From NCBI RefSeq assembly GCF_902713615.1, contig NC_052162.1:71435686-71499685 (forward strand): 64,000 bases of DNA, written 5' to 3'. The translations under genes and the position numbers were made by a program. This DNA is from Scyliorhinus canicula. Lineage: Eukaryota. The notes beneath the pieces were generated by a model. The model saw nothing but the letters and a program-made list of their open reading frames with translations. It was not told the origin of the DNA and made no database searches. Shown here piece after piece: positions 883-15,819 of the stretch. Each line of letters begins with the position of its first letter. Positions within the stretch are counted from its first letter, which is position 1.

Positions 883-1710
883 TGCTTCCAATAGGAATAC
901 GAAGCGCGCACAATTCAGTCCCAGCACCAACACGTATTGTCCCCCGAATGGAGAATTCTGACCACTATTTACTTGGTTTCACTGTCCTTCATTCACAATC
1001 TCGCTTTTACAGATTGGGTTTATTCTATTTCCTCATGTAATATTCTTCAGCTATAACTGATTCTATTAACTCCATGCAGAATATAGTCAAGAACATTTTA
1101 TTGAAATTTGACGATTTAATCAGCGATACATTCATTTCATTAATCTGTTTTATTTGTCCATAGATTGGGACAAATCTCTGGGCCTTTAACTCCCAGTGTA
1201 TTCCCTAACAGACATATCTTCCAGTCTTTGTTTGATTAATCTTTTTATAACATCACTTTGGGTTGCTTGGAGGCTCGACTTTGTTCCTGGAACAATAAGG
1301 AAAGACCTGCAGCAGAAATTTCACAAAATGGGCCACTTGGGGAAAGTTAGTTGTTCAGCAAATGTTAAATCTATTTATTTCCCCGCAGATGAAAGAAAAT
1401 TTCTTCAGCTTTATTTAAATACGATATCCGCACACGTGTGGGATGGTATGGTAATGCTACCATATACCAATGATATCCACATGAACACCCAATGGCCTTA
1501 CCAAGATGGGGCTTCAAATAATAGATCCAATACAAGTACATGAGTTAGCTCATGGCACCAGATGGCTGATGTCATGGAGAGGTTGAATGGAGACCCCTCT
1601 ATGCATGTGATCAGGACCTGTGGCAAATGGGATTGCTTACTCCTTACATGGTTAGGTCCCTGTGTAGTCAAAGGGTGATGTTATCCCTCATGATCAGAGT
1701 CCCAATGGAA

Positions 1711-2043
1711 GCAGCATGGTGGCACCGTGGTTAGCACTGCTGCCTCACAGTGCCAAGGACCTGGCTTCAATTCCAGCCTTGAGTCACTGTCTGTGTGGAG
1801 TTTGCACTTTCTCCCCGTGTCTGCGTGGGTTTCCTCTGGGTGCTCAAGTTTCCTCCCACTGTCCAAATATGTGCCAGTTAAGTGGATTCATCATGATAAA
1901 TTGCCCCTTAGTATCCAACAAAGTGGGGTTATGGGGATAGGGCAAGGAATTGGGCCTGGGGAGGGTGCTCATCCAGAGGGTCAGTGCAGACTTGATGGGC
2001 CGAATGGCCTCCTTCTGCATTGTAAGGATTCTATGGATTCTAT
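1711..2043 (+). mobile_element. HE1-type (V-SINE) tRNA-derived SINE, older copy
   Basis: A/B-box head (GTGGTTAGCACTGCTGCCTCACAG..GGCTTCAATTCC), V-core TGTGTGGAGTTTGCAC..TCTCCCCGTGTCTGCGTGGGTTTCC, CR1-like tail GGATTCTAT repeat. Confidence 0.9.
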
Positions 2044-2611
2044 GGAATGGTTTCAAAATGTCCTGTTTGAATGTTACTAGACCCCCAAAAGAGGACTAGA
2101 ATTCCACAATCCCTCAATGAGATCCATGCTGTCAGTGTTTTGATAATCATCGGCGTTAGTACCGTTAGAATGTTTGCAATAAAAAACATCCATACCTGAC
2201 TTCTCAGAATTATGGGCTTTTAGTCGCTTATTGCCTAGATCCTGCCTTCGGAATGCAGCATGCTCGCTGGAGACAAGGATTTCATATTGATTTCTAATTG
2301 CAGAGGTGAGTTGACCATTATTAATTTTTAGCCCCTTCTCCTTTGTGCTCCCACAAAGATCAAGATAACCAATTCAGTGGTGGCCAATTTGACTTAATCC
2401 AAGTTGGTCTTATGTGCATAACAAAACATAATTATAGTCATATTATGCCCCCCAGAAATGTGATCAATTACATCACCATTCAATTTTTTTTTCGTCATGA
2501 AGTTGCAACCCTATTTATAAAGTAGGAGGTTATCTTTTTCTAAAAGGTAATGTGTATCAAAAATGCAGATTTTTCTCCATCACAAGCAGCAATGTGAGTT
2601 CCAGTTTTGGC

Positions 2612-2812
2612 CTCTGGATAATCATCAATAACGGAACAGCCAACTTAGATTTTCTTGCCCCTAGCTCAAGAATGCTGAGGGTAATTGTAAAACCCTTGGC
2701 ACTACCCTGGCTGAGATCTGCTTCCTTATCACAAAACCAGAGATTGAACCAAGGACCATTCCCGGATGCATAAAGTAGTTCCACGCTGTGTAATGTATTT
2801 ATCGACCGAACC
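2612..2812 (-). mobile_element. Ancient AmnSINE2-like SINE remnant
   Basis: Minus strand GGTCCTTGGTTCAATCTCTGGTTTTGTGATAAGGAAGCAGATCTCAGCCAGGG..ACAATTACCCTCAGCA..GAGCTAGGGG..AAAATC..GATTATCCAG follows the AmnSINE2 layout as I recall it. Confidence 0.6.
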
Positions 2813-3993
2813 TGCCAGATTATCCCTGCAAGAGTTTTTTTTTAGATGTAACAAAATCCTTCTAAATAGAAATGAAATAGAATTTGAGTAAACCTGATTA
2901 TTGACCTTTGCATGATAAGTGTCCACGGTGACCCTAACGATCCAGTATAATTGATAGAGACAAAATTGAACATTTCAGACAAGCTATTTATTATTCTGTG
3001 TGGGTGTTTTTTTTTCATTGCATGCAGGTAGTTGATGGGTCACCCTCTAAATTATATGTCTTAGAAAAATAGGTAGGTAATAATTTAGCAAGCCTGCTAT
3101 TATGCAGCACCAATTTCCTCTTACACAATTCATTGGCAATTGAAAATATTACTGATAGCTTGCCATGCCCCTGGAGTAATAGTCCATTAGAATGTCTAAA
3201 AGTGGAGGAGGCCTTAGATGTACAACACTAAGTAGCCTACTGGAGACTGTTAATACATGATCACTTCTGTCACTCTCAAAGCCCTTGCAATTCCTTGGCA
3301 ATCCTTTAGAAACTGCAAATCCACCTCAGCAGTTGAACCAGGCAATCAATCATTCAGAAGCAAGGAGAGAAAGTGTTCACGGGGAGCATTAGGGAGGCAA
3401 TTAAATGACACTGTTGTGCGGAATAAGAATGGTGAGATTTCTGCTCCCTCAACTGATTTATTTTAGTCAGCATGTGTTTTGCACACATTGGAACAATTAA
3501 CCCCTCTTCATTAAGACATGGTGTGACTCTAATTTCCCTCGATTTCTTGGCAAACTGAGGTGTTCCATACCAACAACAGGATGAGATTAAAATGTGATAT
3601 ACCAGTTTAGTCACGCAATTTTCAGTTAGTCAAAATGACGGCATTGTAGCATTTGACAGCAGGGACTATTGGCACCGAGACCAAATTTCGACAAGCTAAA
3701 TATAAGTAGCAGTTTAATTGGTTTAAAAATCTGAGTTGTTGTGTGGTTTTAGGAAAAAAGCAGGAATATAAATGCAAAATTTGAGTTGAAGCTGTCATAT
3801 TATGGGGGCTATTTTCAAGATACCATAATTGTATCATCAATATTATGGGGGTTTGCTGCTGAGACATTTTTTTTCAACCATCTTGTTAAAACATCCAAAA
3901 TGGCAAAATCCAACTGCACAGAAAATCTGTTAACATACATTTTCTTTCAGAAAAAATAAAGTTTTTTTGTTGTCTTCTTTAAAATTGTTTTTC

Positions 3994-8029: not shown

Positions 8030-9370
8030 CAATTTATGTCTTCCAGGGTCAAACGTTATGTCACAGATTTTTAAAGAAAGCATGAGTAGCTTGGGGATAA
8101 AACAGTTTAAGTTTTCAACATGCCATCCACAATCACAAGGAGAATTGGAAATGTGGAATCAAATCTTGCAGACCATGATTAGGGCCTATTGTCAAGAATG
8201 TTTGGACAATTTGGATAAGGGGATTCCATTCTTATCATTTGCCATCCAAGTTGCACCCAGTAAATCAACGTGGTTCAGTCCTTTTGAGTTAATACATGGA
8301 CATTTTTAGAAGGATTTTTTAGAAGGATGAGAGGGGATTTTATACAAACATATAAAATTATGAAGGGAATAGATAGGATAGATAGATAGGATAGGCACTG
8401 TCTGTGCGGAGTCTGCACGTCCCCCCCCCCGTGTGTGCGTGGGTTTCCTCCGGGTGCTCCGGTTTCCTCCCACAGTCCAAAGATGTGCGGGTTAGGTGGA
8501 TTGGCCATGCTAAATTGCCCGTAGTGTCCTAAAAAGGTAAGGTTAAGGGGGGGGGGGTTGTTGGGTTACGGGTATAGGGTGGATACGTGGGTTTGAGTAG
8601 GGTGATCATGGCTCGGCACAACATCGAGGGCCGAAGGGCCTGTTCTGTGCTGTACTGTTCTATGTTCTATGTAGCTGCGGGCGGGTTGTTTCCACTGGCG
8701 GGTGAAAGCAGAACTAAGGGGCATAGCCTCAAAATAAGAAGAAATAGATTTAGGACTGCATTTAGGAGGAACTTCTTCACCCACAGGGTTGTGAATCTAT
8801 GGAATTCCTTGCCGAGTGAGGCTCCTTCATTAAATTTTTTTAAGATAAAGATAGATAGCTTTTTGAAGAATAACGGGATTAAGGGTTATGGTGTTCGGGC
8901 CGGAAAGTAGAGCTGAGTCTACAAAAGAGCAGCCATGATCTGATTGAATGGCGGAGCAGGCTCGAGGGGCCAGATGGCCAACTCTGCTCCTAGTTTTTAT
9001 GTTCTTATGACATGAAGTGAGCGGACCATTAAAACCTTTTCAGGAGAAATTTATAAATCAAGTATCAGAAACTACTTTTTCAGCCGATATGTCCAAATTG
9101 CAGGTGAGATTATTAAAGCATGTGAAGGAGTGAAGAAACATTTCAAAGTTTCCCAATGAATAATGAAAGACCGAGACAGAACAGCTGAAAGATTGAAATT
9201 TTAAACCTGGACATATAGTATTAGTGTTTCTGCCTTTACCAGATGAAACTCTAATGACAAGGTTTAGTGGACATTATCATCTTAAAAAGAGACTTAATCA
9301 GACAAATTATGTGATTAGCACATCAGATAGAAGGAAAAAAAATTAATGAGTGTATCATGTTAATATTATA
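8030..9370 (+). pseudogene. Integrase of the outer Gmr1-type Gypsy (interrupted 8310-9010)
   Basis: ORF 8058-8309 MSQIFKESMSSLGIKQFKFSTCHPQSQGELE...QTMIRAYC...DKGIPFLSFA...STWFSPFELIHGH. A later F.PG..VLV.LP...RFSGHY segment is GPY/F-like. Confidence 0.8.
8310..9010 (+). mobile_element. CR1 LINE 3' end containing a 5'-truncated young HE1 SINE (8393-8670)
   Basis: SRTKGHSLKI...FR...RRNFFTHRVVNLWNSLP is the CR1 ORF2 C-terminus. HE1 core and TTCTATG tail lie inside it. Confidence 0.9.
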
Positions 9371-10665
9371 ATATTAGTCAGGAGAAGAATTTATTCAGAG
9401 TAGTCGGGGTGGCAAAGAGTAAGATGAACGAATCGGGGAATTTCAATGAGGAATCTGGATGGTGTTGAGCTTCTTGAGTGTTGTTGGAGCTGCACTCATT
9501 CAGGCAAGTGGGGAGTATTCCATCACACTCCTGACTTGTGTCTTGTATTTAATAGAATTCTTAGTCTCTGACTCGCTCTTATAGACACAGTATTTGTATT
9601 GCTAGTCTAGTTCTGTTTTTGGTCTATGGTAACACCCACGTTGTTGATGGTGGGAAATTCAGCAATTATAATGCCATTCAATGTCAAGTGTGACGATTGG
9701 AAGATGTTAGGAAAGTTGGATTGCAAATGAGTGGGCAATTTAAGAGTTAAAAGCCTGGGGGTATTACATTTGACTGCAATGGTCAGAGTTTTATAATGGA
9801 TTTTGTTTTGCTTCTGGGGAATAGCACGTGAAATTGATGAAGGATGTGTTTTTCAGTTTAGTTTAATGGGCTGTGTTTTCACTGAGGAGGTCCCTGGGGA
9901 ATTAATGTGCTTTTGAAGCCTGCAAGAGGTCATTTGTTTTTTAGCTTGGGGAGATGAGATTATTGCGGAGTGGAGCCCAGAAAGGCTAAGAGGCAATGAG
10001 TTTGGAGGACCTTTGAGAGAGAGGGGAGCTGATTTATGATCTGCCTGACTCTGAGTCCTCAATTCTTTCCAAGTAGGATAGCTAAACAAAAAAGAGAAAT
10101 AAAATTTTAAAGCAGAGCAATCTTATCTGAAAACAAGGAAGAGGCTGAAACAACCTAGTAGAAACAGCTATTTAAAGATATTCAGCCAGAGTCTGAAGGA
10201 GTTCTAACCAGAGGCAAATCTGTTTTATAAAGCAAGTATTACTCTATGCCCTGCTAATTTAAAGATGGATTAAGAGCTGTATGTTTCTTTCCTCGTTGTT
10301 TAATAGGAAATTGTATTGTTGTATATTTTCTTTTCAGTTGTGAAATTAGAAGTTTAATATTGCATTCATAATAGAGTTTTGTTTCAGAAATGCCAAAGCC
10401 CTATTTTTTTCATGAAGTCACTTCTGACGCAAATCATTCTTTCCGCACAGCCTTAAAATAAACTAAAATATTGTTTTGATCCAGTGTCCTCACCTTTGTT
10501 CTGGTATTGGTTTGGGATCGTAATGAAATTAGGGGCTTGCCCAGTATCGGGATCTTAAGTATAATTCCTCATTTGGTTTGGGGCTATTGAACTTCAAGGA
10601 AGTGAGTGTGTGTGGAGTGATTGCGTTATTTCAGATTTTGAAATTTTAATAGGGAGTGGTGGGAA

Positions 10666-11960
10666 ATGTTTTATTCAGTTGCAAAGATTTTCCTGAATGT
10701 GGAAGTGATTACTTGGGATGGTTTACAATGGGAGATTAAAGCAAAATCTTTGGTTTGGTGGATAAGCTAAAGTTAACCTTATCAAAAGGGGTGTGCAAAG
10801 TAGAGATAATACATGCCCTAGCTCAATATTTAAATTTGCCAGCGACAAGTCTGAATCATTAGAATTAGCTGGAATTCAATTCCAAATAGAAATGAAAAAT
10901 TGGAAATAGAAGCAAAGGAAAAGGAGAGATTGGCAATGGCAGAAGATAAGGAGAAAGAGAGAGCAGAAAAGGAAAAAGAGAAGGCAGAAAAGGAAAAAGA
11001 GAAGGCTTTTCATGGACAGGAGAAAGATTGAGGTAGAAATGGAAAGATTAGCAAAAGAATAAAGGGATAAGGAGAGAGAGAATTTTTATTTCAGAAACTG
11101 GCACTGCAAGGAGAACATAAACATAAAAGGTAGAAGTTAAAGGCAGAAGCCGAGGAAGGCTTAGTAGAAGAAGAACGTCTGAGTCAAAAGTTTAGTGGGG
11201 GAAAGTTTGAATATATTCAAGCACTACCAAGATTTTATGAGAAAGATGTGGAAGCCTTTTTCATCTCATTTGAGAAAGTTGGTAAACAATTGAATTGGCC
11301 AAATTCCATGTGAGTTGTGTTGGTTCAAACGACGTTGGTGGGTAGAGTTAGTGAAATGTTTACAACACTATCAGAGAAGGTATCGAGGGATTATGATGAG
11401 GTGAGGTAAACTACATTGAGTGCGTATTAACTACTGCCAGAAGCCTACAGGCAAAACTTTACAAATCTAATGAAAGATGAGGTCAGACACATATAATTTG
11501 AAAAGCTTAAACAAAATAATTTAACAGGTGGATAAGTGCATTAAACATATACCAAACGTTTGACACTCTCAGGGAAATAATTGTTTTTGAGGAATTTAAA
11601 GGTTAACTTCCCACAGTAGTGAAAACTCATGTGGAATAACAAAGAGTTAAACAACTAAATAGGCCACAGAAAGGCCGATGATTTTGAATTGGTTCATAAA
11701 ACAAAGTTTGGTTTTCAACATCAATTTCAATCTGTGAAGGATAGAAACTGGGGAAATGAAAAATTCACAGGTGGTTAATGCAAAGGTTCAGTTGGTGATG
11801 TCAAGGAGTGTGTGCCTCAGAGTAAGAAGAAAACCTATGATAATGGTGGAGAAATAAGAAAATGCAAGTGTTTTCATTGCAACAAAGATGAACATGTGAA
11901 GTTGTAGTGTCGGTGGCTTGAGAAAAGTACTGGGGAGACAGACTCAGTAAAACCAGATAG
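10666..11960 (+). pseudogene. Decayed gag of the inner element (E/K-rich coil, SCAN-like capsid region, zinc knuckle)
   Basis: ALPRFYEKDVEAFFISFEKVGKQLNWP, LLPEAYRQNF, LREIIVFEEFK and KCFHCNKDEHVKL*C, with several stops. Confidence 0.8.
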
Positions 11961-12012
11961 GATAATGGTGTTTATCAAAGTGGGAGGAAAAACCATTGTT
12001 CCAGTGGAAGAA

Positions 12013-13020
12013 TTTGGATTGGATTTGATTGTTGTCCGTGTACCGAGCTACAGTTAAAAGTATTGTTCTACATACAGTCCAGACAGATTATTCCATATAT
12101 GAAAAATAAACATACATAAATACACAAGGTATAGATTGACACATGGATCAGGTGAATCATACAGGAGTGCAGTACTATTTAGTGGAGAAGATGTGTGAAG
12201 AGATTAGATCAGTCCATAAGAGGGTCATTTATGAGTCGGATGACAGTGGGGAAGAAGCTGTTTTTAATCTGTTAGTGCATGTTCTCAGACTTCTGCACTT
12301 AATGCCCGATGCAAGAAGTTGGAAGAGTGAATAACCTGGGTGGGAGCTGTCTTTGATTATGGTGCCCATTTTGCCAAGGCATTGGGAGATGTAGACAGAG
12401 GAATGGATGGGAGGCGGGTTTGCATGATGGACGGCACTGTGTTCATGACACTCTAATTTGTTACGGTCTTGGGTCAAGCAGTTGCCATACCAGGCTGTGA
12501 TGCAGCCATATAGGATTCTTTCTATGGTGCATCTGTAAAAGTTGGTAAGAGTCAATGTGGACATGCTGAATTTCATTAGTTTCCTGAGGAAGTATAGGCA
12601 CAGTTGTGCTTTCCTGGTCGACGTGGGTGGACCACGACAGATTGTTAGTGATGTGCACACCTAGGAATTTGAAGCTGTCAACCATCTCAACCTCGGCACC
12701 ACTGATGAAGAAGGGAGTGTGTACGATACTTTGCTTCCTGAAATCAATGACCAGCTCTTTAGTTTTTCTGACATTGAGGGAGAGATTGTTGTCATTACAC
12801 CACTCCACTAGGTTCTCTATCTCTCTGCCATACTCTGACTCACTACAGTAAACTTGTAGATGGAGTTGGAGCCAAATTTTTCCACACAGTCATGTGTGTG
12901 TATAAGGTGTACAGCAGGGGGCTAAGTACGCAGCTTTACGGGGCCCAGTATTGAGGGCAATTGTGGAGGAGGTGTTGTTGTTGTTTATCCTTACTGATTG
13001 TGGCCTATGGGTCAGAAAGT
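12013..13020 (-). mobile_element. Rex1/Babar LINE, 5'-truncated (RT C-terminus and 3'UTR)
   Basis: WCNDNNLSLNVRKTKELVIDFRK...VDSFKFLGVHITNNLSWS and KAQLCLYFLRKL...FYRCTIE.IL.GCITAWYGNC...HPGYSLFQLL.SG. Confidence 0.92.
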
Positions 13021-13189
13021 GAACTTGCTCAGGAGCTCCAGCATACCAGCAGTCATCTGCATGAGCGAGAAAGGAGTGGCAACAACTTCAACAATAGTTT
13101 GCAATGCAAGAAAATGCAGGAACTGTGGTGCTCCAAGAGCAGTCCAATTCCAGTCATGGGTGTGACACAGGAGGTGATGATACTCGTAT

Positions 13190-13625
13190 CTGGTCAAGAG
13201 GATCAGATGAATGATTGGATCTGTTTCTCCATTTCACAGAGATTATCTGCAGTGGTGGAATACTGAGTCCGGAGGTTGAAAAGCTGGTACAAATGTGGCC
13301 AGAACATTGAGCAAACCTTCAGCATACAATGAATGGTGCCTTGCACTGTCCGAATTCGGCAGCTGTTACTAATTAGTTTGAGCTATCCTCAACAGACCCC
13401 AAAGGAAGCAGAATACAAAGCAGTTGATAAAATGTGAAGAACTGATGATGAATGCTGCAGCATCGATCAACAATCTGTCTTCCACTCAAGTGAAGAATTC
13501 TGCTGCGAGGGCAGGGAACTGCATATAACTGAATTATTGATTAAACTTTTATTTTTTCACAATATGCATGCAATCTTAGAGGCCTACTGGATCTTCGGAA
13601 ATCTCTCTCGCTCTAAGGAGTGGAT
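13190..13625 (+). pseudogene. ARMC2: Intronless decayed fragment of an ARMC2-like armadillo-repeat mRNA captured inside the LTR element
   Basis: Across frameshifts it reads RGSDE*LDLFLHF...ANL...QLLLISL[SYPQQTPKEA]EYKAVDK/CEELMMNAAASINNLSSTQVKNSA/RELHITELLIKLLFFHNMHAILEAYWIFGNLSRSKE. This matches, from memory, vertebrate ARMC2 ..LLLTTLEYKSLDDCEELVINATATINNLSYYQVKNS..LYIAELLLKLLVSNNMDGILEAVRVFGNLS. Confidence 0.75.
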
Positions 13626-14660
13626 AGATTTATTATAACATGTGAGAAGACAAAAATGGACTATATTCATGTTAATGTTTGCCTGTAAAAAAAATTCTTA
13701 ATTATATGTTGTATAGAATATAAATTGTGTATAATCTTAAGAAATGTTTGACGTTAAAAAGGTTTTAAAAGAATGAACTCATCTGTTTATATTACTGGTT
13801 CACTTTTTTAGAGGAGGAGGTGTGATGATTCGAATATGTTATGGAAATTGGATTATAAATGAAGTGGGAATTTAAGAGTTAAAAGCCTTGGGGTATAATA
13901 TGTAGCTACAGTGGTATAAGTTTGAAAAAGGATTTTGTTTTACTTCTAGGGAACAGCAGGTGAAACTGCTGAATGATGTATTTTTTAAACTAGACTAATG
14001 GACTGTAGTTTGAGTGGGGAGGTCCCTGGGAAGCTTTTGCAGCCTGCAGAGATCATTTGTTTTTTAACTTGGGGTGATGAAATAATTGTGGGGTGGATCC
14101 CACAAAGGCAGAGAGGCAAGGCAGTGAGTTTGGAGAGGCTATGAAAGAGAGAAGAGCGAGTTCTGATGTGCCTGACTCTGAGTCCACAATCCGTTCTAAG
14201 TAGGATAGCTAAAAATAGAGTAATAATATTTTAAAACAGAGCAATCTTGTCTGAGGACAAGGAAGAGACTAAAATAACCTAGTTCAAACAGCTATTTGAA
14301 GATATTCAGCCAGAGTCTGAAGGGGTTCCAACCAGAGCCAAATCTGTTTTATAAAGCAAGTATTACTCTATGCCATGATAATTTTAGGATAGATTAAGAG
14401 TTGTATGTTTATTTTCTTGCTGTTTAATGGGAAATTGTCTTTTGTGTTATGGGGTAATTGTAAGCTGTTCTTTTCAGGTGTGAAGTTAAAAGTATAATTG
14501 CATGCATAATAAAGTTTTCTTTTAGAAATACCAAAGCCCTATTTTTTCATGCAAATAGTCCGGAAGCAGATCATTCTTTCCGCAGTCTAAAAATACACTA
14601 TAATATTTCGGTTTCAGTCCAGTGTCCTAGCCACTGTTCGAGTCTGATCTGGGATCGTCT

Positions 14661-15010
14661 GGGGCAGCAGGGTAGCATGGTGGTTAGCATAAATGCTTCA
14701 CAGCTCCAGGGTCCCAGGTTCGATTCCCGGCTGGGTCACTGTCTGTGTGGAGTCTGCACGTCCTCCCCCTGTGTGCGTGGGTTTCCTCCGGGTGCTCCGG
14801 TTTCCTCCCACAGTCCAAAGATGTGCGGGTTAGGTGGATTGGCCATGCTAAATTGCCCGTAGTGTCCTAATGAAAGTAAGGTTAAGGGGGGGTTGTTGGG
14901 TTACGGGTATGGGGTGGATATGTGGGTTTGAGTAGGGTGATCATGGCTCGGCACAACATTGAGGGCCGAAGGGCCTTTTCTGTGCTGTACTGTTCTATGT
15001 TCTATGTTCT
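14661..15010 (+). mobile_element. Young full-length HE1 SINE at the end of the inner 3' LTR
   Basis: GGGGCAGCAGGGTAGCATGGTGGTTAGC..(TTCTATG)n, nearly identical to 39961-40317 and 43952-44307. Confidence 0.95.
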
Positions 15011-15819
15011 AAACGGATGGTTAAATTATTTTTTGTTAGAGATGTGGTATAAATGTTACTTGCCATCTGTTAACCGAAGCTTGAATATTGTGCAGATCCT
15101 GTTGTATTGGGACATGCTCTGCTTCAGTACTTGAGTAGTCATGAATGGTGCTGAACAATTCCTTGTCATCAGCGGACATCCCCAGTTATGATATTATGAT
15201 GGAAGGAGGTTTATTGATGAAACAGCTGAAGATGGTTGGCCTAGGACACTACACTAAGGAATTCTTACGGTGATGCCCTGGAACTGAGAGGATAGACATT
15301 TAACAACCATAGCCATCTTTCTTTCTGCTAGGTAATGGAGAGTTTTCCCGCTGATTCCCATTAACTCCAGTTTAGCTAGGGCTCCTTGATGCCATACTCG
15401 GTCAAATGCTGCCTTGATGTCAAGGGCAGTCACTCTCACCCCACCTGTGGTGTTCAACTCTTTTTCCCATGTTTCTACCAAGCTGTAATGAGGTCATGAG
15501 CTGAGTGACACTGGTGGAACCCAAACTGAGCATCAGTGCACAGATTATTGATAAATAAGTGCCGCATGATAGCGCTGGTGATCGCCCCTTCCATCACTTG
15601 CTAATGATCAAGATTAGACTGATAGTCATTAATTGCCTGGGCTGGATTTTGTTCTTGTAATTTCTTTTGGATGATTGCAGAACCGATGGTCAATTCTTTG
15701 AGTCATGTGATCTGTAGTAGCTATTTTGTGGTTCAACAAAAGTCCATTTCAAAATTAGTAAAGAACTATAACGTTTTGATACTCACAGGTTTTGATTTCT
15801 TTTCATGTTTTATTGACAT

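What the first reader, a model, noticed from the sequence alone, without database searches (positions are those of the whole stretch)
13190..13625. Host mRNA fragment (ARMC2-like) captured inside a two-LTR retrotransposon in place of pol
Seen: between gag and the PPT/3' LTR of the 9689-14660 element there is no pol. Instead there is ~430 bp that, across frameshifts, reads ..QLLLISL..EYKAVDK/CEELMMNAAASINNLSSTQVKNS/RELHITELLIKLLFFHNMHAILEAYWIFGNLSRSKE, in the same sense as the element and with no intron or polyA tail. Knowledge: from memory this matches the armadillo repeats of ARMC2, a cilia/sperm-flagellum gene, and LTR elements can capture cellular mRNA by template switching. Inference: this is a non-autonomous LTR element carrying a germline-expressed transcript, possibly an amplified gene-carrying family. 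The ORF track misses it because of the frameshifts.
Basis: partly seen in the sequence, partly recalled or inferred. Interest (0 to 1): 0.85.

Follow-up and report, generated by a model that had tools for sequence, protein, structure and literature searches.

The report
Armadillo-repeat gene fragment inside shark LTR retrotransposon
An old, decayed two-LTR retrotransposon that has gag but no polymerase carries a frameshifted piece of an armadillo-repeat protein gene, and other diverged copies of this piece exist in this species and a second one; gene capture of this kind is known elsewhere, and the ARMC2 label could not be tested.

Summary
LTRs at 9689-10521 and 13821-14658 are 82% alike (K2P 0.20). 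They enclose a decayed gag with a CCHC knuckle, no recognisable RT or integrase, and a purine tract next to the 3' LTR.

The stretch 13215-13635 reads as armadillo (ARM) repeats across at least four frame changes, in the element's sense. The two best matches to an ARM helix-3 consensus among 127,906 six-frame positions of the window lie here. They are on one strand, 128 nt apart, which is one repeat length.

New here: 13091-14030 is a low-copy repeat. About 3-11 distinct contigs per variant site in this species and 6-41 in a second species are 82-92% alike, an abundance like the LTR's U3 part. Other copies and 5 of 5 RNA reads lack the extra A at 13429, so that frameshift is private to this copy.

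This supports capture before amplification by a non-autonomous LTR family. ARMC2 identity, spliced-mRNA origin and germline expression were not testable; no search retrieved an ARMC2 sequence. I rate it a new member of a known kind, of moderate interest. The scan holds two unchecked notes of NAP1L1 fused to a Gypsy gag-protease elsewhere in this genome.

The parts
9689..10521 (+). 5' LTR (starts TGTGA; similarity to the 3' LTR ends at ...GGGATCGT)
10531..10555 (+). primer-binding-site-like stretch a few bases after the 5' LTR (resembles a tRNA-Pro PBS with an insertion; inference from memory, not tested)
   Evidence: sequence
10650..12037 (+). decayed gag in several frames with stops; CCHC zinc knuckle CFHCNKDEHVKL*C at 11869-11910
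   Evidence: pieces; weak language-model leads, 0.75-0.83, all to retrotransposon-gag-type families; no Pfam hit
12038..13020 (-). nested 5'-truncated LINE (L2-like) 3' fragment, antisense to the element
   Evidence: minus-strand ORFs; PF09004 E 1.2e-7; summed contig depth about 60,000 falling to about 20 after 13063, and LINE contigs leaving the window at 13020
13021..13090 (.). 70 bp of unknown origin next to the LINE 5' end; diverged family contigs start to match only at 13091/13092
   Evidence: table 8, records 9 and 17
13091..13214 (+). family-shared internal sequence of unassigned coding identity (frame 3 is open from 13098 to 13307 apart from one stop)
   Evidence: no protease or other family found
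13215..13635 (+). armadillo-repeat coding fragment read across at least 4 frame changes; H3-type motifs at 13436-13483 and 13564-13611
   Evidence: extra A at 13429 absent from other copies and RNA reads (table 4)
13636..13809 (+). AT-rich 3' internal region, shared with diverged copies that continue into the LTR
   Evidence: record 11: 13641-14013; one organism-B contig with small insertions at 13633-13636
13810..13820 (+). polypurine tract AGAGGAGGAGG
13821..14658 (+). 3' LTR; the U3-side part (to about 14200) is low-copy, the rest is high-copy

Best explanation
This is one old, decayed copy of a low-copy, non-autonomous LTR retrotransposon family. The family keeps LTRs, a PBS-like site, gag with a CCHC knuckle and a PPT, but has no RT or integrase. 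In the place of pol it carries about 420-545 bp from a host armadillo-repeat protein gene, in the sense of the element. ARMC2 is the likely parent by recollection only. The host piece was acquired before the family spread. The most likely route is a read-through or co-packaged host transcript joined to the element's RNA by template switching during reverse transcription. The chimera was then copied in trans by enzymes of autonomous relatives. This copy later took a LINE fragment in antisense (12038-13020) and several private frameshifts, so it encodes nothing today. Shown: the anatomy, the ARM nature of the stretch, the multi-copy status and the private frameshift at 13429. Inferred: host origin, capture mechanism, mobilisation in trans, parent gene.
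For: - Anatomy: LTR pair, PPT and gag knuckle.
- ARM nature: the 66-aa piece matches designed consensus ARM proteins over LLIKLLFFHNMHAILEAYWIFGNLSR. The language-model search gives Arm families at 0.96 with all ten best hits in one clan. The two best ARM-H3 matches of the whole window are adjacent at one repeat spacing.
- Family status: at 80% likeness, variant sites in 13129-13708 are carried by 3-11 contigs in this species' DNA run X1 and 6-41 contigs in organism B's run X10. This is like the U3 part of the LTR (5-7 and 13-19 contigs) and far below the R-U5 part (58-77 and over 100 contigs).
- Diverged contigs tile 13091-13418, 13232-13512 and 13641-14013, and one organism-B contig crosses 13633-13636.
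- The extra A at 13429 is missing in 3 (X1) and 11 (X10) contigs and in 5 of 5 RNA reads.
- There is no poly(A) at the fragment's end.
- Precedent: ERV capture of KIT-ligand and nectin3 mRNAs in crocodilians (PMC4299795) and LTR-retrotransposon gene capture in rice and sorghum (PMC3726574).
Against: - No diverged contig spans gag to ARM or ARM to LTR in one piece. The only long contig from ARM into the LTR (13444-13933) is the window's own locus.
- The LTRs are only 82% alike and no target-site duplication was found (a SINE abuts the 3' LTR), so a composite of two elements is not excluded.
- Pfam's Arm model gave no hit on any piece. The PDB E-values come from summing the same weak 26-aa match over repeats.
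- No host parent was retrieved, so 'host-derived' rests on the fact that LTR elements are not known to encode ARM repeats.
- Summed contig depth is not a copy number.
Confidence: 0.6

Rival explanations
1. The ARM-like module belongs to a different multi-copy repeat (another transposon or a retrocopy family). That repeat nested into this LTR element or its ancestor, and the link with gag and the LTR is not a feature of the other copies.
For: No diverged contig links ARM to gag or to the LTR in one piece. Depth over 13406-13519 is higher than on either side. A more diverged, high-depth homolog covers only that core (X8 about 190, X10 about 387).
Against: Contig counts are even from 13129 to 13988 and match the U3 part of the LTR. 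One diverged contig crosses the ARM/3'-internal boundary at 13633-13636 and another crosses the PPT/LTR boundary (13641-14013). No terminal repeats, poly(A) or duplications bound the module.
Confidence: 0.15
2. The structure is composite. Two related LTR elements or solo LTRs flank a piece of host DNA that holds a dead exon or pseudogene of an ARM-repeat gene, so there was no capture and no retrotransposition of the fragment.
For: LTR identity is only 82% with K2P 0.20. No target-site duplication was found. A splice-acceptor-like tract (ctgtttctccatttcacag) ends at 13239, and RNA reads start in the bin 13235-13291.
Against: The region is multi-copy in two species at the abundance of the LTR's U3. 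One organism-B copy is continuous across 13169-13240 with 34 other letters in place of the acceptor-like tract, and those letters lack its ACAG end (table 5c). The PPT and 3' internal region are contiguous with the fragment.
Confidence: 0.1
3. The fragment is a LINE-mediated processed pseudogene inserted into this element after integration.
For: A LINE fragment lies next to it, and there is an A8 run at 13679-13686.
Against: The LINE is on the opposite strand. The ARM similarity stops 44 bp before the A8 run and is not the 3' end of a coding sequence. No flanking duplication was seen. The fragment is shared by many diverged copies.
Confidence: 0.05
4. The ARM resemblance is chance, and the stretch is ordinary non-coding internal sequence of the element.
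For: No Pfam hit. No significant specific hit among 1.84 billion representative proteins. AlphaFold folds the 43-aa piece as one plain helix.
Against: The top two ARM-H3 scores of the whole window sit side by side at repeat spacing. The language-model score is 0.96, reached by about 1 in 100 shuffled sequences.
Confidence: 0.05

Closest known systems
Host mRNA capture by endogenous retroviruses (crocodilian CrocERV29 with KIT-ligand, CrocERV31 with nectin3; PMC4299795) and, classically, acutely transforming retroviruses
   Same: Host coding sequence lies between the LTRs in sense orientation and replaces viral coding sequence. The chimera multiplied into several genomic copies and is shared between related species.
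   Different: Here only about 140 codons of an internal part of the gene are present, not a whole ORF, and this copy is frameshifted. The element is gag-only, with no RT, integrase or env left. The parent gene and the lack of introns are unverified.
Gene-fragment capture by plant LTR retrotransposons (maize Bs1 from my own knowledge; rice and sorghum survey PMC3726574)
   Same: A non-autonomous LTR element carries a host gene fragment in its internal region. Most such captures decay as pseudogenes.
   Different: The host here is a cartilaginous fish. My two literature searches on this returned no shark or ray case, which is not proof that none exists.
ARMC2 (armadillo repeat-containing 2, cargo adapter for radial-spoke transport in cilia and flagella; PMC8789290)
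   Same: It is an ARM-repeat protein.
   Different: No ARMC2 sequence could be obtained, so nothing was aligned. ARMC3, which was retrieved, matches only at generic ARM level (30% identity or less, E above 0.5).
LARD/TRIM-type non-autonomous LTR retrotransposons
   Same: They have LTRs, PBS and PPT without their own polymerase and depend on autonomous relatives.
   Different: This family keeps a gag-like ORF and carries host-like coding sequence.

Membership tests
LTR retrotransposon (structural definition) | Two direct long terminal repeats in the same orientation | tested here: met
   9689-10521 and 13821-14658, 82.4% identical
LTR retrotransposon (structural definition) | Polypurine tract directly upstream of the 3' LTR | tested here: met
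   AGAGGAGGAGG at 13810-13820
LTR retrotransposon (structural definition) | Primer-binding site complementary to a tRNA 3' end just after the 5' LTR | tested here: inconclusive
   A PBS-like stretch lies at 10531-10555. Its resemblance to a tRNA-Pro PBS is from memory, and no tRNA was aligned.
LTR retrotransposon (structural definition) | Target-site duplication and TG...CA termini | tested here: not met
   Both LTRs start with TG, but no CA end and no matching 4-6 bp flanks were found. A SINE abuts the 3' LTR at 14659/14660. With about 10% decay per site this does not exclude a single insertion.
LTR retrotransposon (structural definition) | gag with a CCHC zinc knuckle | tested here: met
   C-X2-C-X4-H-X4-C at 11869-11910 with one stop inside. 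Only weak gag-family leads and no Pfam hit.
Autonomous LTR element | RT, RNase H and integrase domains between gag and the PPT | tested here: not met
   None on the + strand. The only polymerase-related remnant is the antisense LINE.
Armadillo repeat (Pfam PF00514, clan ARM) | Score above the Pfam gathering threshold | tested here: not met
   No Arm hit on any stop-free piece at E up to 10. The pieces are short (66 aa or less) and decayed.
Armadillo repeat (Pfam PF00514, clan ARM) | Tandem units of about 42 residues with the conserved helix-3 pattern | tested here: met
   The rank 1 and rank 2 H3 matches of the window lie 128 nt apart on one strand. Match to designed consensus ARM proteins. 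Arm clusters at 0.96.
ARMC2 orthologue-derived sequence | ARMC2 is the best protein hit, clearly above other ARM proteins | tested here: inconclusive
   The representative search gave only 2 generic ARM hits. Word-index searches found no candidates or were swamped by the carrier protein's relatives. A roughly 40-aa decayed match could fall under the E 0.001 cut.
Retroelement-transduced host mRNA | Fragment colinear with spliced mRNA (crosses exon junctions, no introns) | not testable with these tools
   No parent locus or mRNA sequence could be obtained.
Retroelement-transduced host mRNA | Same host/element junctions in several copies of the family | tested here: inconclusive
   Diverged contigs cross 13633-13636 and 13641-14013, and abundance equals that of the LTR's U3.
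LINE-mediated processed pseudogene | 3' poly(A) tail and flanking target-site duplication of the fragment itself | tested here: not met
   No poly(A) at 13635. The A8 run lies 44 bp downstream. No flanking repeats were reported.

The most novel reading that the evidence does not exclude
An ARM-repeat module taken from a cilia/flagellum gene has been kept by a gag-only LTR lineage through long evolution. It exists in at least two subfamilies more than 20% apart and in two shark species, and it is transcribed. The few letters seen of a high-depth, more diverged homolog keep the ARM frame open over 29 bases past the window's second frameshift site (of 7 differences in that stretch, two are synonymous and one gives E to Q). 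Together with the unchecked notes of NAP1L1 fused behind a Gypsy gag-protease in the same genome, this would point to a class of shark LTR elements that recurrently acquire host genes and perhaps express gag-host fusion proteins.
Probability: 0.12. Interest if true: 0.7.

Novelty: new member of a known kind. Interest (0 to 1): 0.4.

Why it matters
Capture of host coding sequence by LTR elements is well documented in plants and retroviruses but rare in vertebrate germlines, and my searches found no case from cartilaginous fishes. An amplified, transcribed family carrying sense-strand sequence of a flagellar gene could feed small-RNA pathways that cross-target the parent gene. It would also mark when such non-autonomous elements were active. 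As it stands this copy is dead and the parent gene is unverified, so the value is mainly as a lead for a genome-wide survey of gene-carrying LTR families in sharks.

Tried and rejected
- Pfam on all stop-free pieces of 13000-13635 gave no Arm hit.
- phmmer of the 66-aa piece against 1.84 billion representative proteins gave only two generic ARM or low-complexity proteins.
- Word-index protein searches with the 66-aa and 48-aa pieces found no candidates.
- An alignment with a long ARM carrier, used to widen the length window, was swamped by the carrier's dinoflagellate relatives. It returned ARMC3 but no ARMC2.
- BLASTP of the pieces against everything retrieved showed only generic ARM-level matches.
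- phmmer of P0001 against all 1,675 six-frame pieces ranks the 66-aa piece first, but this is circular because P0001 was found with that piece.
- AlphaFold of the 43-aa piece gave one long helix, unfit for a fold search, so none was run.
- A protease reading of 13098-13211 (a DTGG motif in frame 3) found no support in Pfam, PDB or the protein atlas.
- PDB searches of the gag piece and the 48-aa piece found nothing useful.
- Peptide strings from the window were not found in ARMC2 papers or the paper library.
- Exact-protein look-ups of two window ORFs in public assemblies found nothing on record.
- Self-BLAST found no second copy of the fragment or of the flanking older repeat in the window, so the empty site and the target duplication could not be reconstructed.
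- Pfam on the upstream antisense LINE pieces gave no RVT hit. The LINE call rests on PF09004, its depth and motif knowledge.

Full report
**1. What is in the sequence**

Two direct repeats, 9688-10521 and 13820-14658, were found independently by the repeat finder and by BLAST. A global alignment gives 82.4% identity over 819 sites, K2P 0.20. Both repeats begin TGTGA. The purine run AGAGGAGGAGG (13810-13820) abuts the 3' repeat.

Behind the 5' LTR lie a PBS-like stretch and then about 1.4 kb of gag-like reading frames broken by stops. These end in a CCHC knuckle at 11869-11910. Pfam does not recognise the gag pieces. The protein-atlas search gives only weak leads (0.75-0.83), all to retrotransposon-gag-type families.

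No RT, RNase H or integrase is present on the + strand before the PPT.

**2.

Between gag and the fragment lies about 1 kb that reads on the minus strand as the C-terminal part of a LINE ORF2. One piece hits PF09004 at E 1.2e-7. From my own knowledge, this domain is typical of L2-type LINE tails.

When public contigs are laid on the stretch, summed depth is about 60,000 at 12950-13006 and collapses to about 20 after 13063. Contigs of that repeat leave the window at exactly 13020. So a 5'-truncated LINE copy (12038-13020) is nested in antisense.

The next 70 bp (13021-13090) are not shared with other copies of the internal region. Those copies begin to match at 13091/13092 (records 9 and 17).

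**3. Is the fragment really armadillo-repeat coding sequence?**

- Pfam finds nothing.
- The 66-aa piece matches designed consensus ARM proteins in the PDB over 26 residues. The small E-values come from adding the same weak match over six identical repeats, so this is suggestive only.
- The language-model search puts the 43-aa piece among Arm clusters at 0.96, a score that about 1 in 100 shuffled sequences reach. All ten best hits fall in one clan.
- The strongest test was my own. I slid the 16-residue helix-3 part of the designed-ARM segment printed over all 127,906 six-frame positions of the window. The best score is 13564-13611 and the second best is 13436-13483, on the same strand and 128 nt apart.
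- The first rank is circular. The second falling one ARM period from it has a chance of roughly 7e-4. 128 is not a multiple of three, which fits a frameshift between the two repeats.

I conclude that this is decayed ARM-repeat coding sequence, in the sense of the element.

**4. Is it ARMC2?**

I could not test this.

- The exhaustive HMMER search of 1.84 billion representatives with the best piece gave only two hits at E 0.001 or better. One is a metagenomic ARM protein and the other a low-complexity protein, at 27-28% identity.
- A decayed match of about 40 residues to a representative up to 50% distant from the shark protein could fall below that cut. The result is therefore inconclusive, not negative.
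- The word-index searches are limited to proteins of similar length and found no candidates. An alignment with a long carrier returned the carrier's relatives and ARMC3, but no ARMC2.
- ARMC3 matches the pieces only at generic ARM level.
- No well-known ARM protein with a solved structure is the parent either.

**5. The new finding: the fragment is part of a family**

I laid Logan contigs of this species' DNA (X1), a small run of unknown kind (X8), a second species' DNA (X10) and raw RNA reads (X19) at 80% likeness.

- The window's own locus appears as exact contigs of depth about 4-6. Beside them are many diverged contigs, 82-92% alike: for example 13091-13418 and 13232-13512 in X10, 13092-13431 in X8 and 13153-13332 in X1.
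- At variant sites between 13129 and 13708, the letter that differs from the window is carried by 3-11 contigs in X1 and 6-41 in X10.
- These counts match the U3-side part of the LTR (5-7 and 13-19 contigs). They are far below the rest of the LTR (58-77 and over 100 contigs).
- A diverged X10 contig runs from 13641 through the PPT to 14013. Another crosses 13633-13636 with small insertions.
- So the module, the 3' internal region and this LTR subfamily occur together at the same low abundance in two species.
- The window's extra A at 13429 is absent from 3 contigs in X1, 11 contigs in X10 and 5 of 5 RNA reads. That frameshift is private to this copy.

All this argues against a later private insertion and for acquisition before the family spread.

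**6. Expression**

- No RNA read matches this copy itself; the cleanest read has 5 differences.
- Reads from other copies or the parent cover 13235-13519 only. All have the first mate on the minus strand, at depth 2-7. The library type does not tell me which RNA strand that means.
- X8 behaves unlike whole-genome DNA: its LINE depth is about 16 times lower than X1's, while its depth over 13406-13519 is higher. It holds a high-depth contig (about 190) over 13430-13505 that continues for 255 letters.
- The first 30 of those letters are about 76% like the window and stay open in the ARM frame. Indels inside the aligned part prevent any claim about an intact ORF.
- A contig with one of the same indels (one base missing at 13468) has depth about 387 in X10. 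Mean contig depth can be inflated by neighbouring repeats, so I do not read it as a copy number.

**7. Mechanism**

The best reading is a non-autonomous LTR family that acquired part of a host ARM-repeat transcript in place of pol and was then copied in trans.

Capture by read-through or co-packaging plus template switching is the established route for retroviruses. It is also the route proposed for the crocodilian ERVs that captured KIT-ligand and nectin3 mRNAs (PMC4299795). LTR retrotransposon gene capture is common in plants (PMC3726574). The mechanism is inferred here, not shown.

The K2P of 0.20 between the LTRs means either a very old insertion or a composite of two elements. No target-site duplication was found, and a SINE abuts the 3' LTR.

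**8. Rivals**

- An independent repeat nested in the element (0.15).
- A composite of two LTR copies around host DNA (0.10). The acceptor-like tract ending at 13239 speaks for this. However, one organism-B copy is continuous there and has 34 other letters in place of the tract, without its ACAG end (table 5c).
- A LINE-mediated pseudogene (0.05). There is no poly(A) or duplication, and the LINE is on the opposite strand.
- Chance resemblance (0.05).

**9. Verdict**

ARMC2, spliced origin and germline expression remain open.

This is a new member of a known kind, of moderate interest. Two other unchecked first-reader notes in this genome describe NAP1L1 fused behind a Gypsy gag-protease. If they hold, host-gene capture may be recurrent in this genome, and that would raise the interest.

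Noticed in passing
window 14660-15010 and 8390-8672: Two copies of a tRNA-headed SINE, 90-97% alike over the shared part (families D3 and D4). The first starts within two bases of the 3' LTR end, which hides any target-site duplication of the LTR element.
   Followed up: partly
window 13821-14658: The LTR is a mosaic in abundance. The U3-side part up to about 14200 is low-copy (summed depth 40-200 in X1). 14204-14650 is 10-80 times more abundant (900-3,300 in X1, up to 30,000 in X10). So many subfamilies share the 3' half of the LTR but not U3 or this internal region.
   Followed up: partly
window 14505-14515 versus 10366-10376: An AATAAA signal in the 3' LTR (cataataaagtttt) reads aatagag in the 5' LTR (alignment).
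   Followed up: no
window 9400-9688 and 15011-15600: Both flanks of the element plus SINE look like parts of one older repeat. On the minus strand, 15300-15450 reads like a LINE reverse-transcriptase region (by eye). No second copy in the window could confirm that the two flanks are contiguous.
   Followed up: partly
window 8300-8400 and 8680-9000: Remnants of CR1-type LINE 3' ends (an RGDFIQTYKIMKG-like reading) lie around the upstream SINE (by eye).
   Followed up: no
window 13225-13239: A splice-acceptor-like tract (ctgtttctccatttcacag) lies just before the ARM reading starts, and RNA reads begin in the same bin. One organism-B copy has 34 other letters in its place, without the ACAG end (table 5c).
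   Followed up: partly
same genome, other pieces (notes s1-253603, s1-258611): First-reader notes describe NAP1L1 mRNA fused in frame behind a Gypsy gag-protease. This may be the same kind of gene-carrying LTR element. I could not see those sequences.
   Followed up: no
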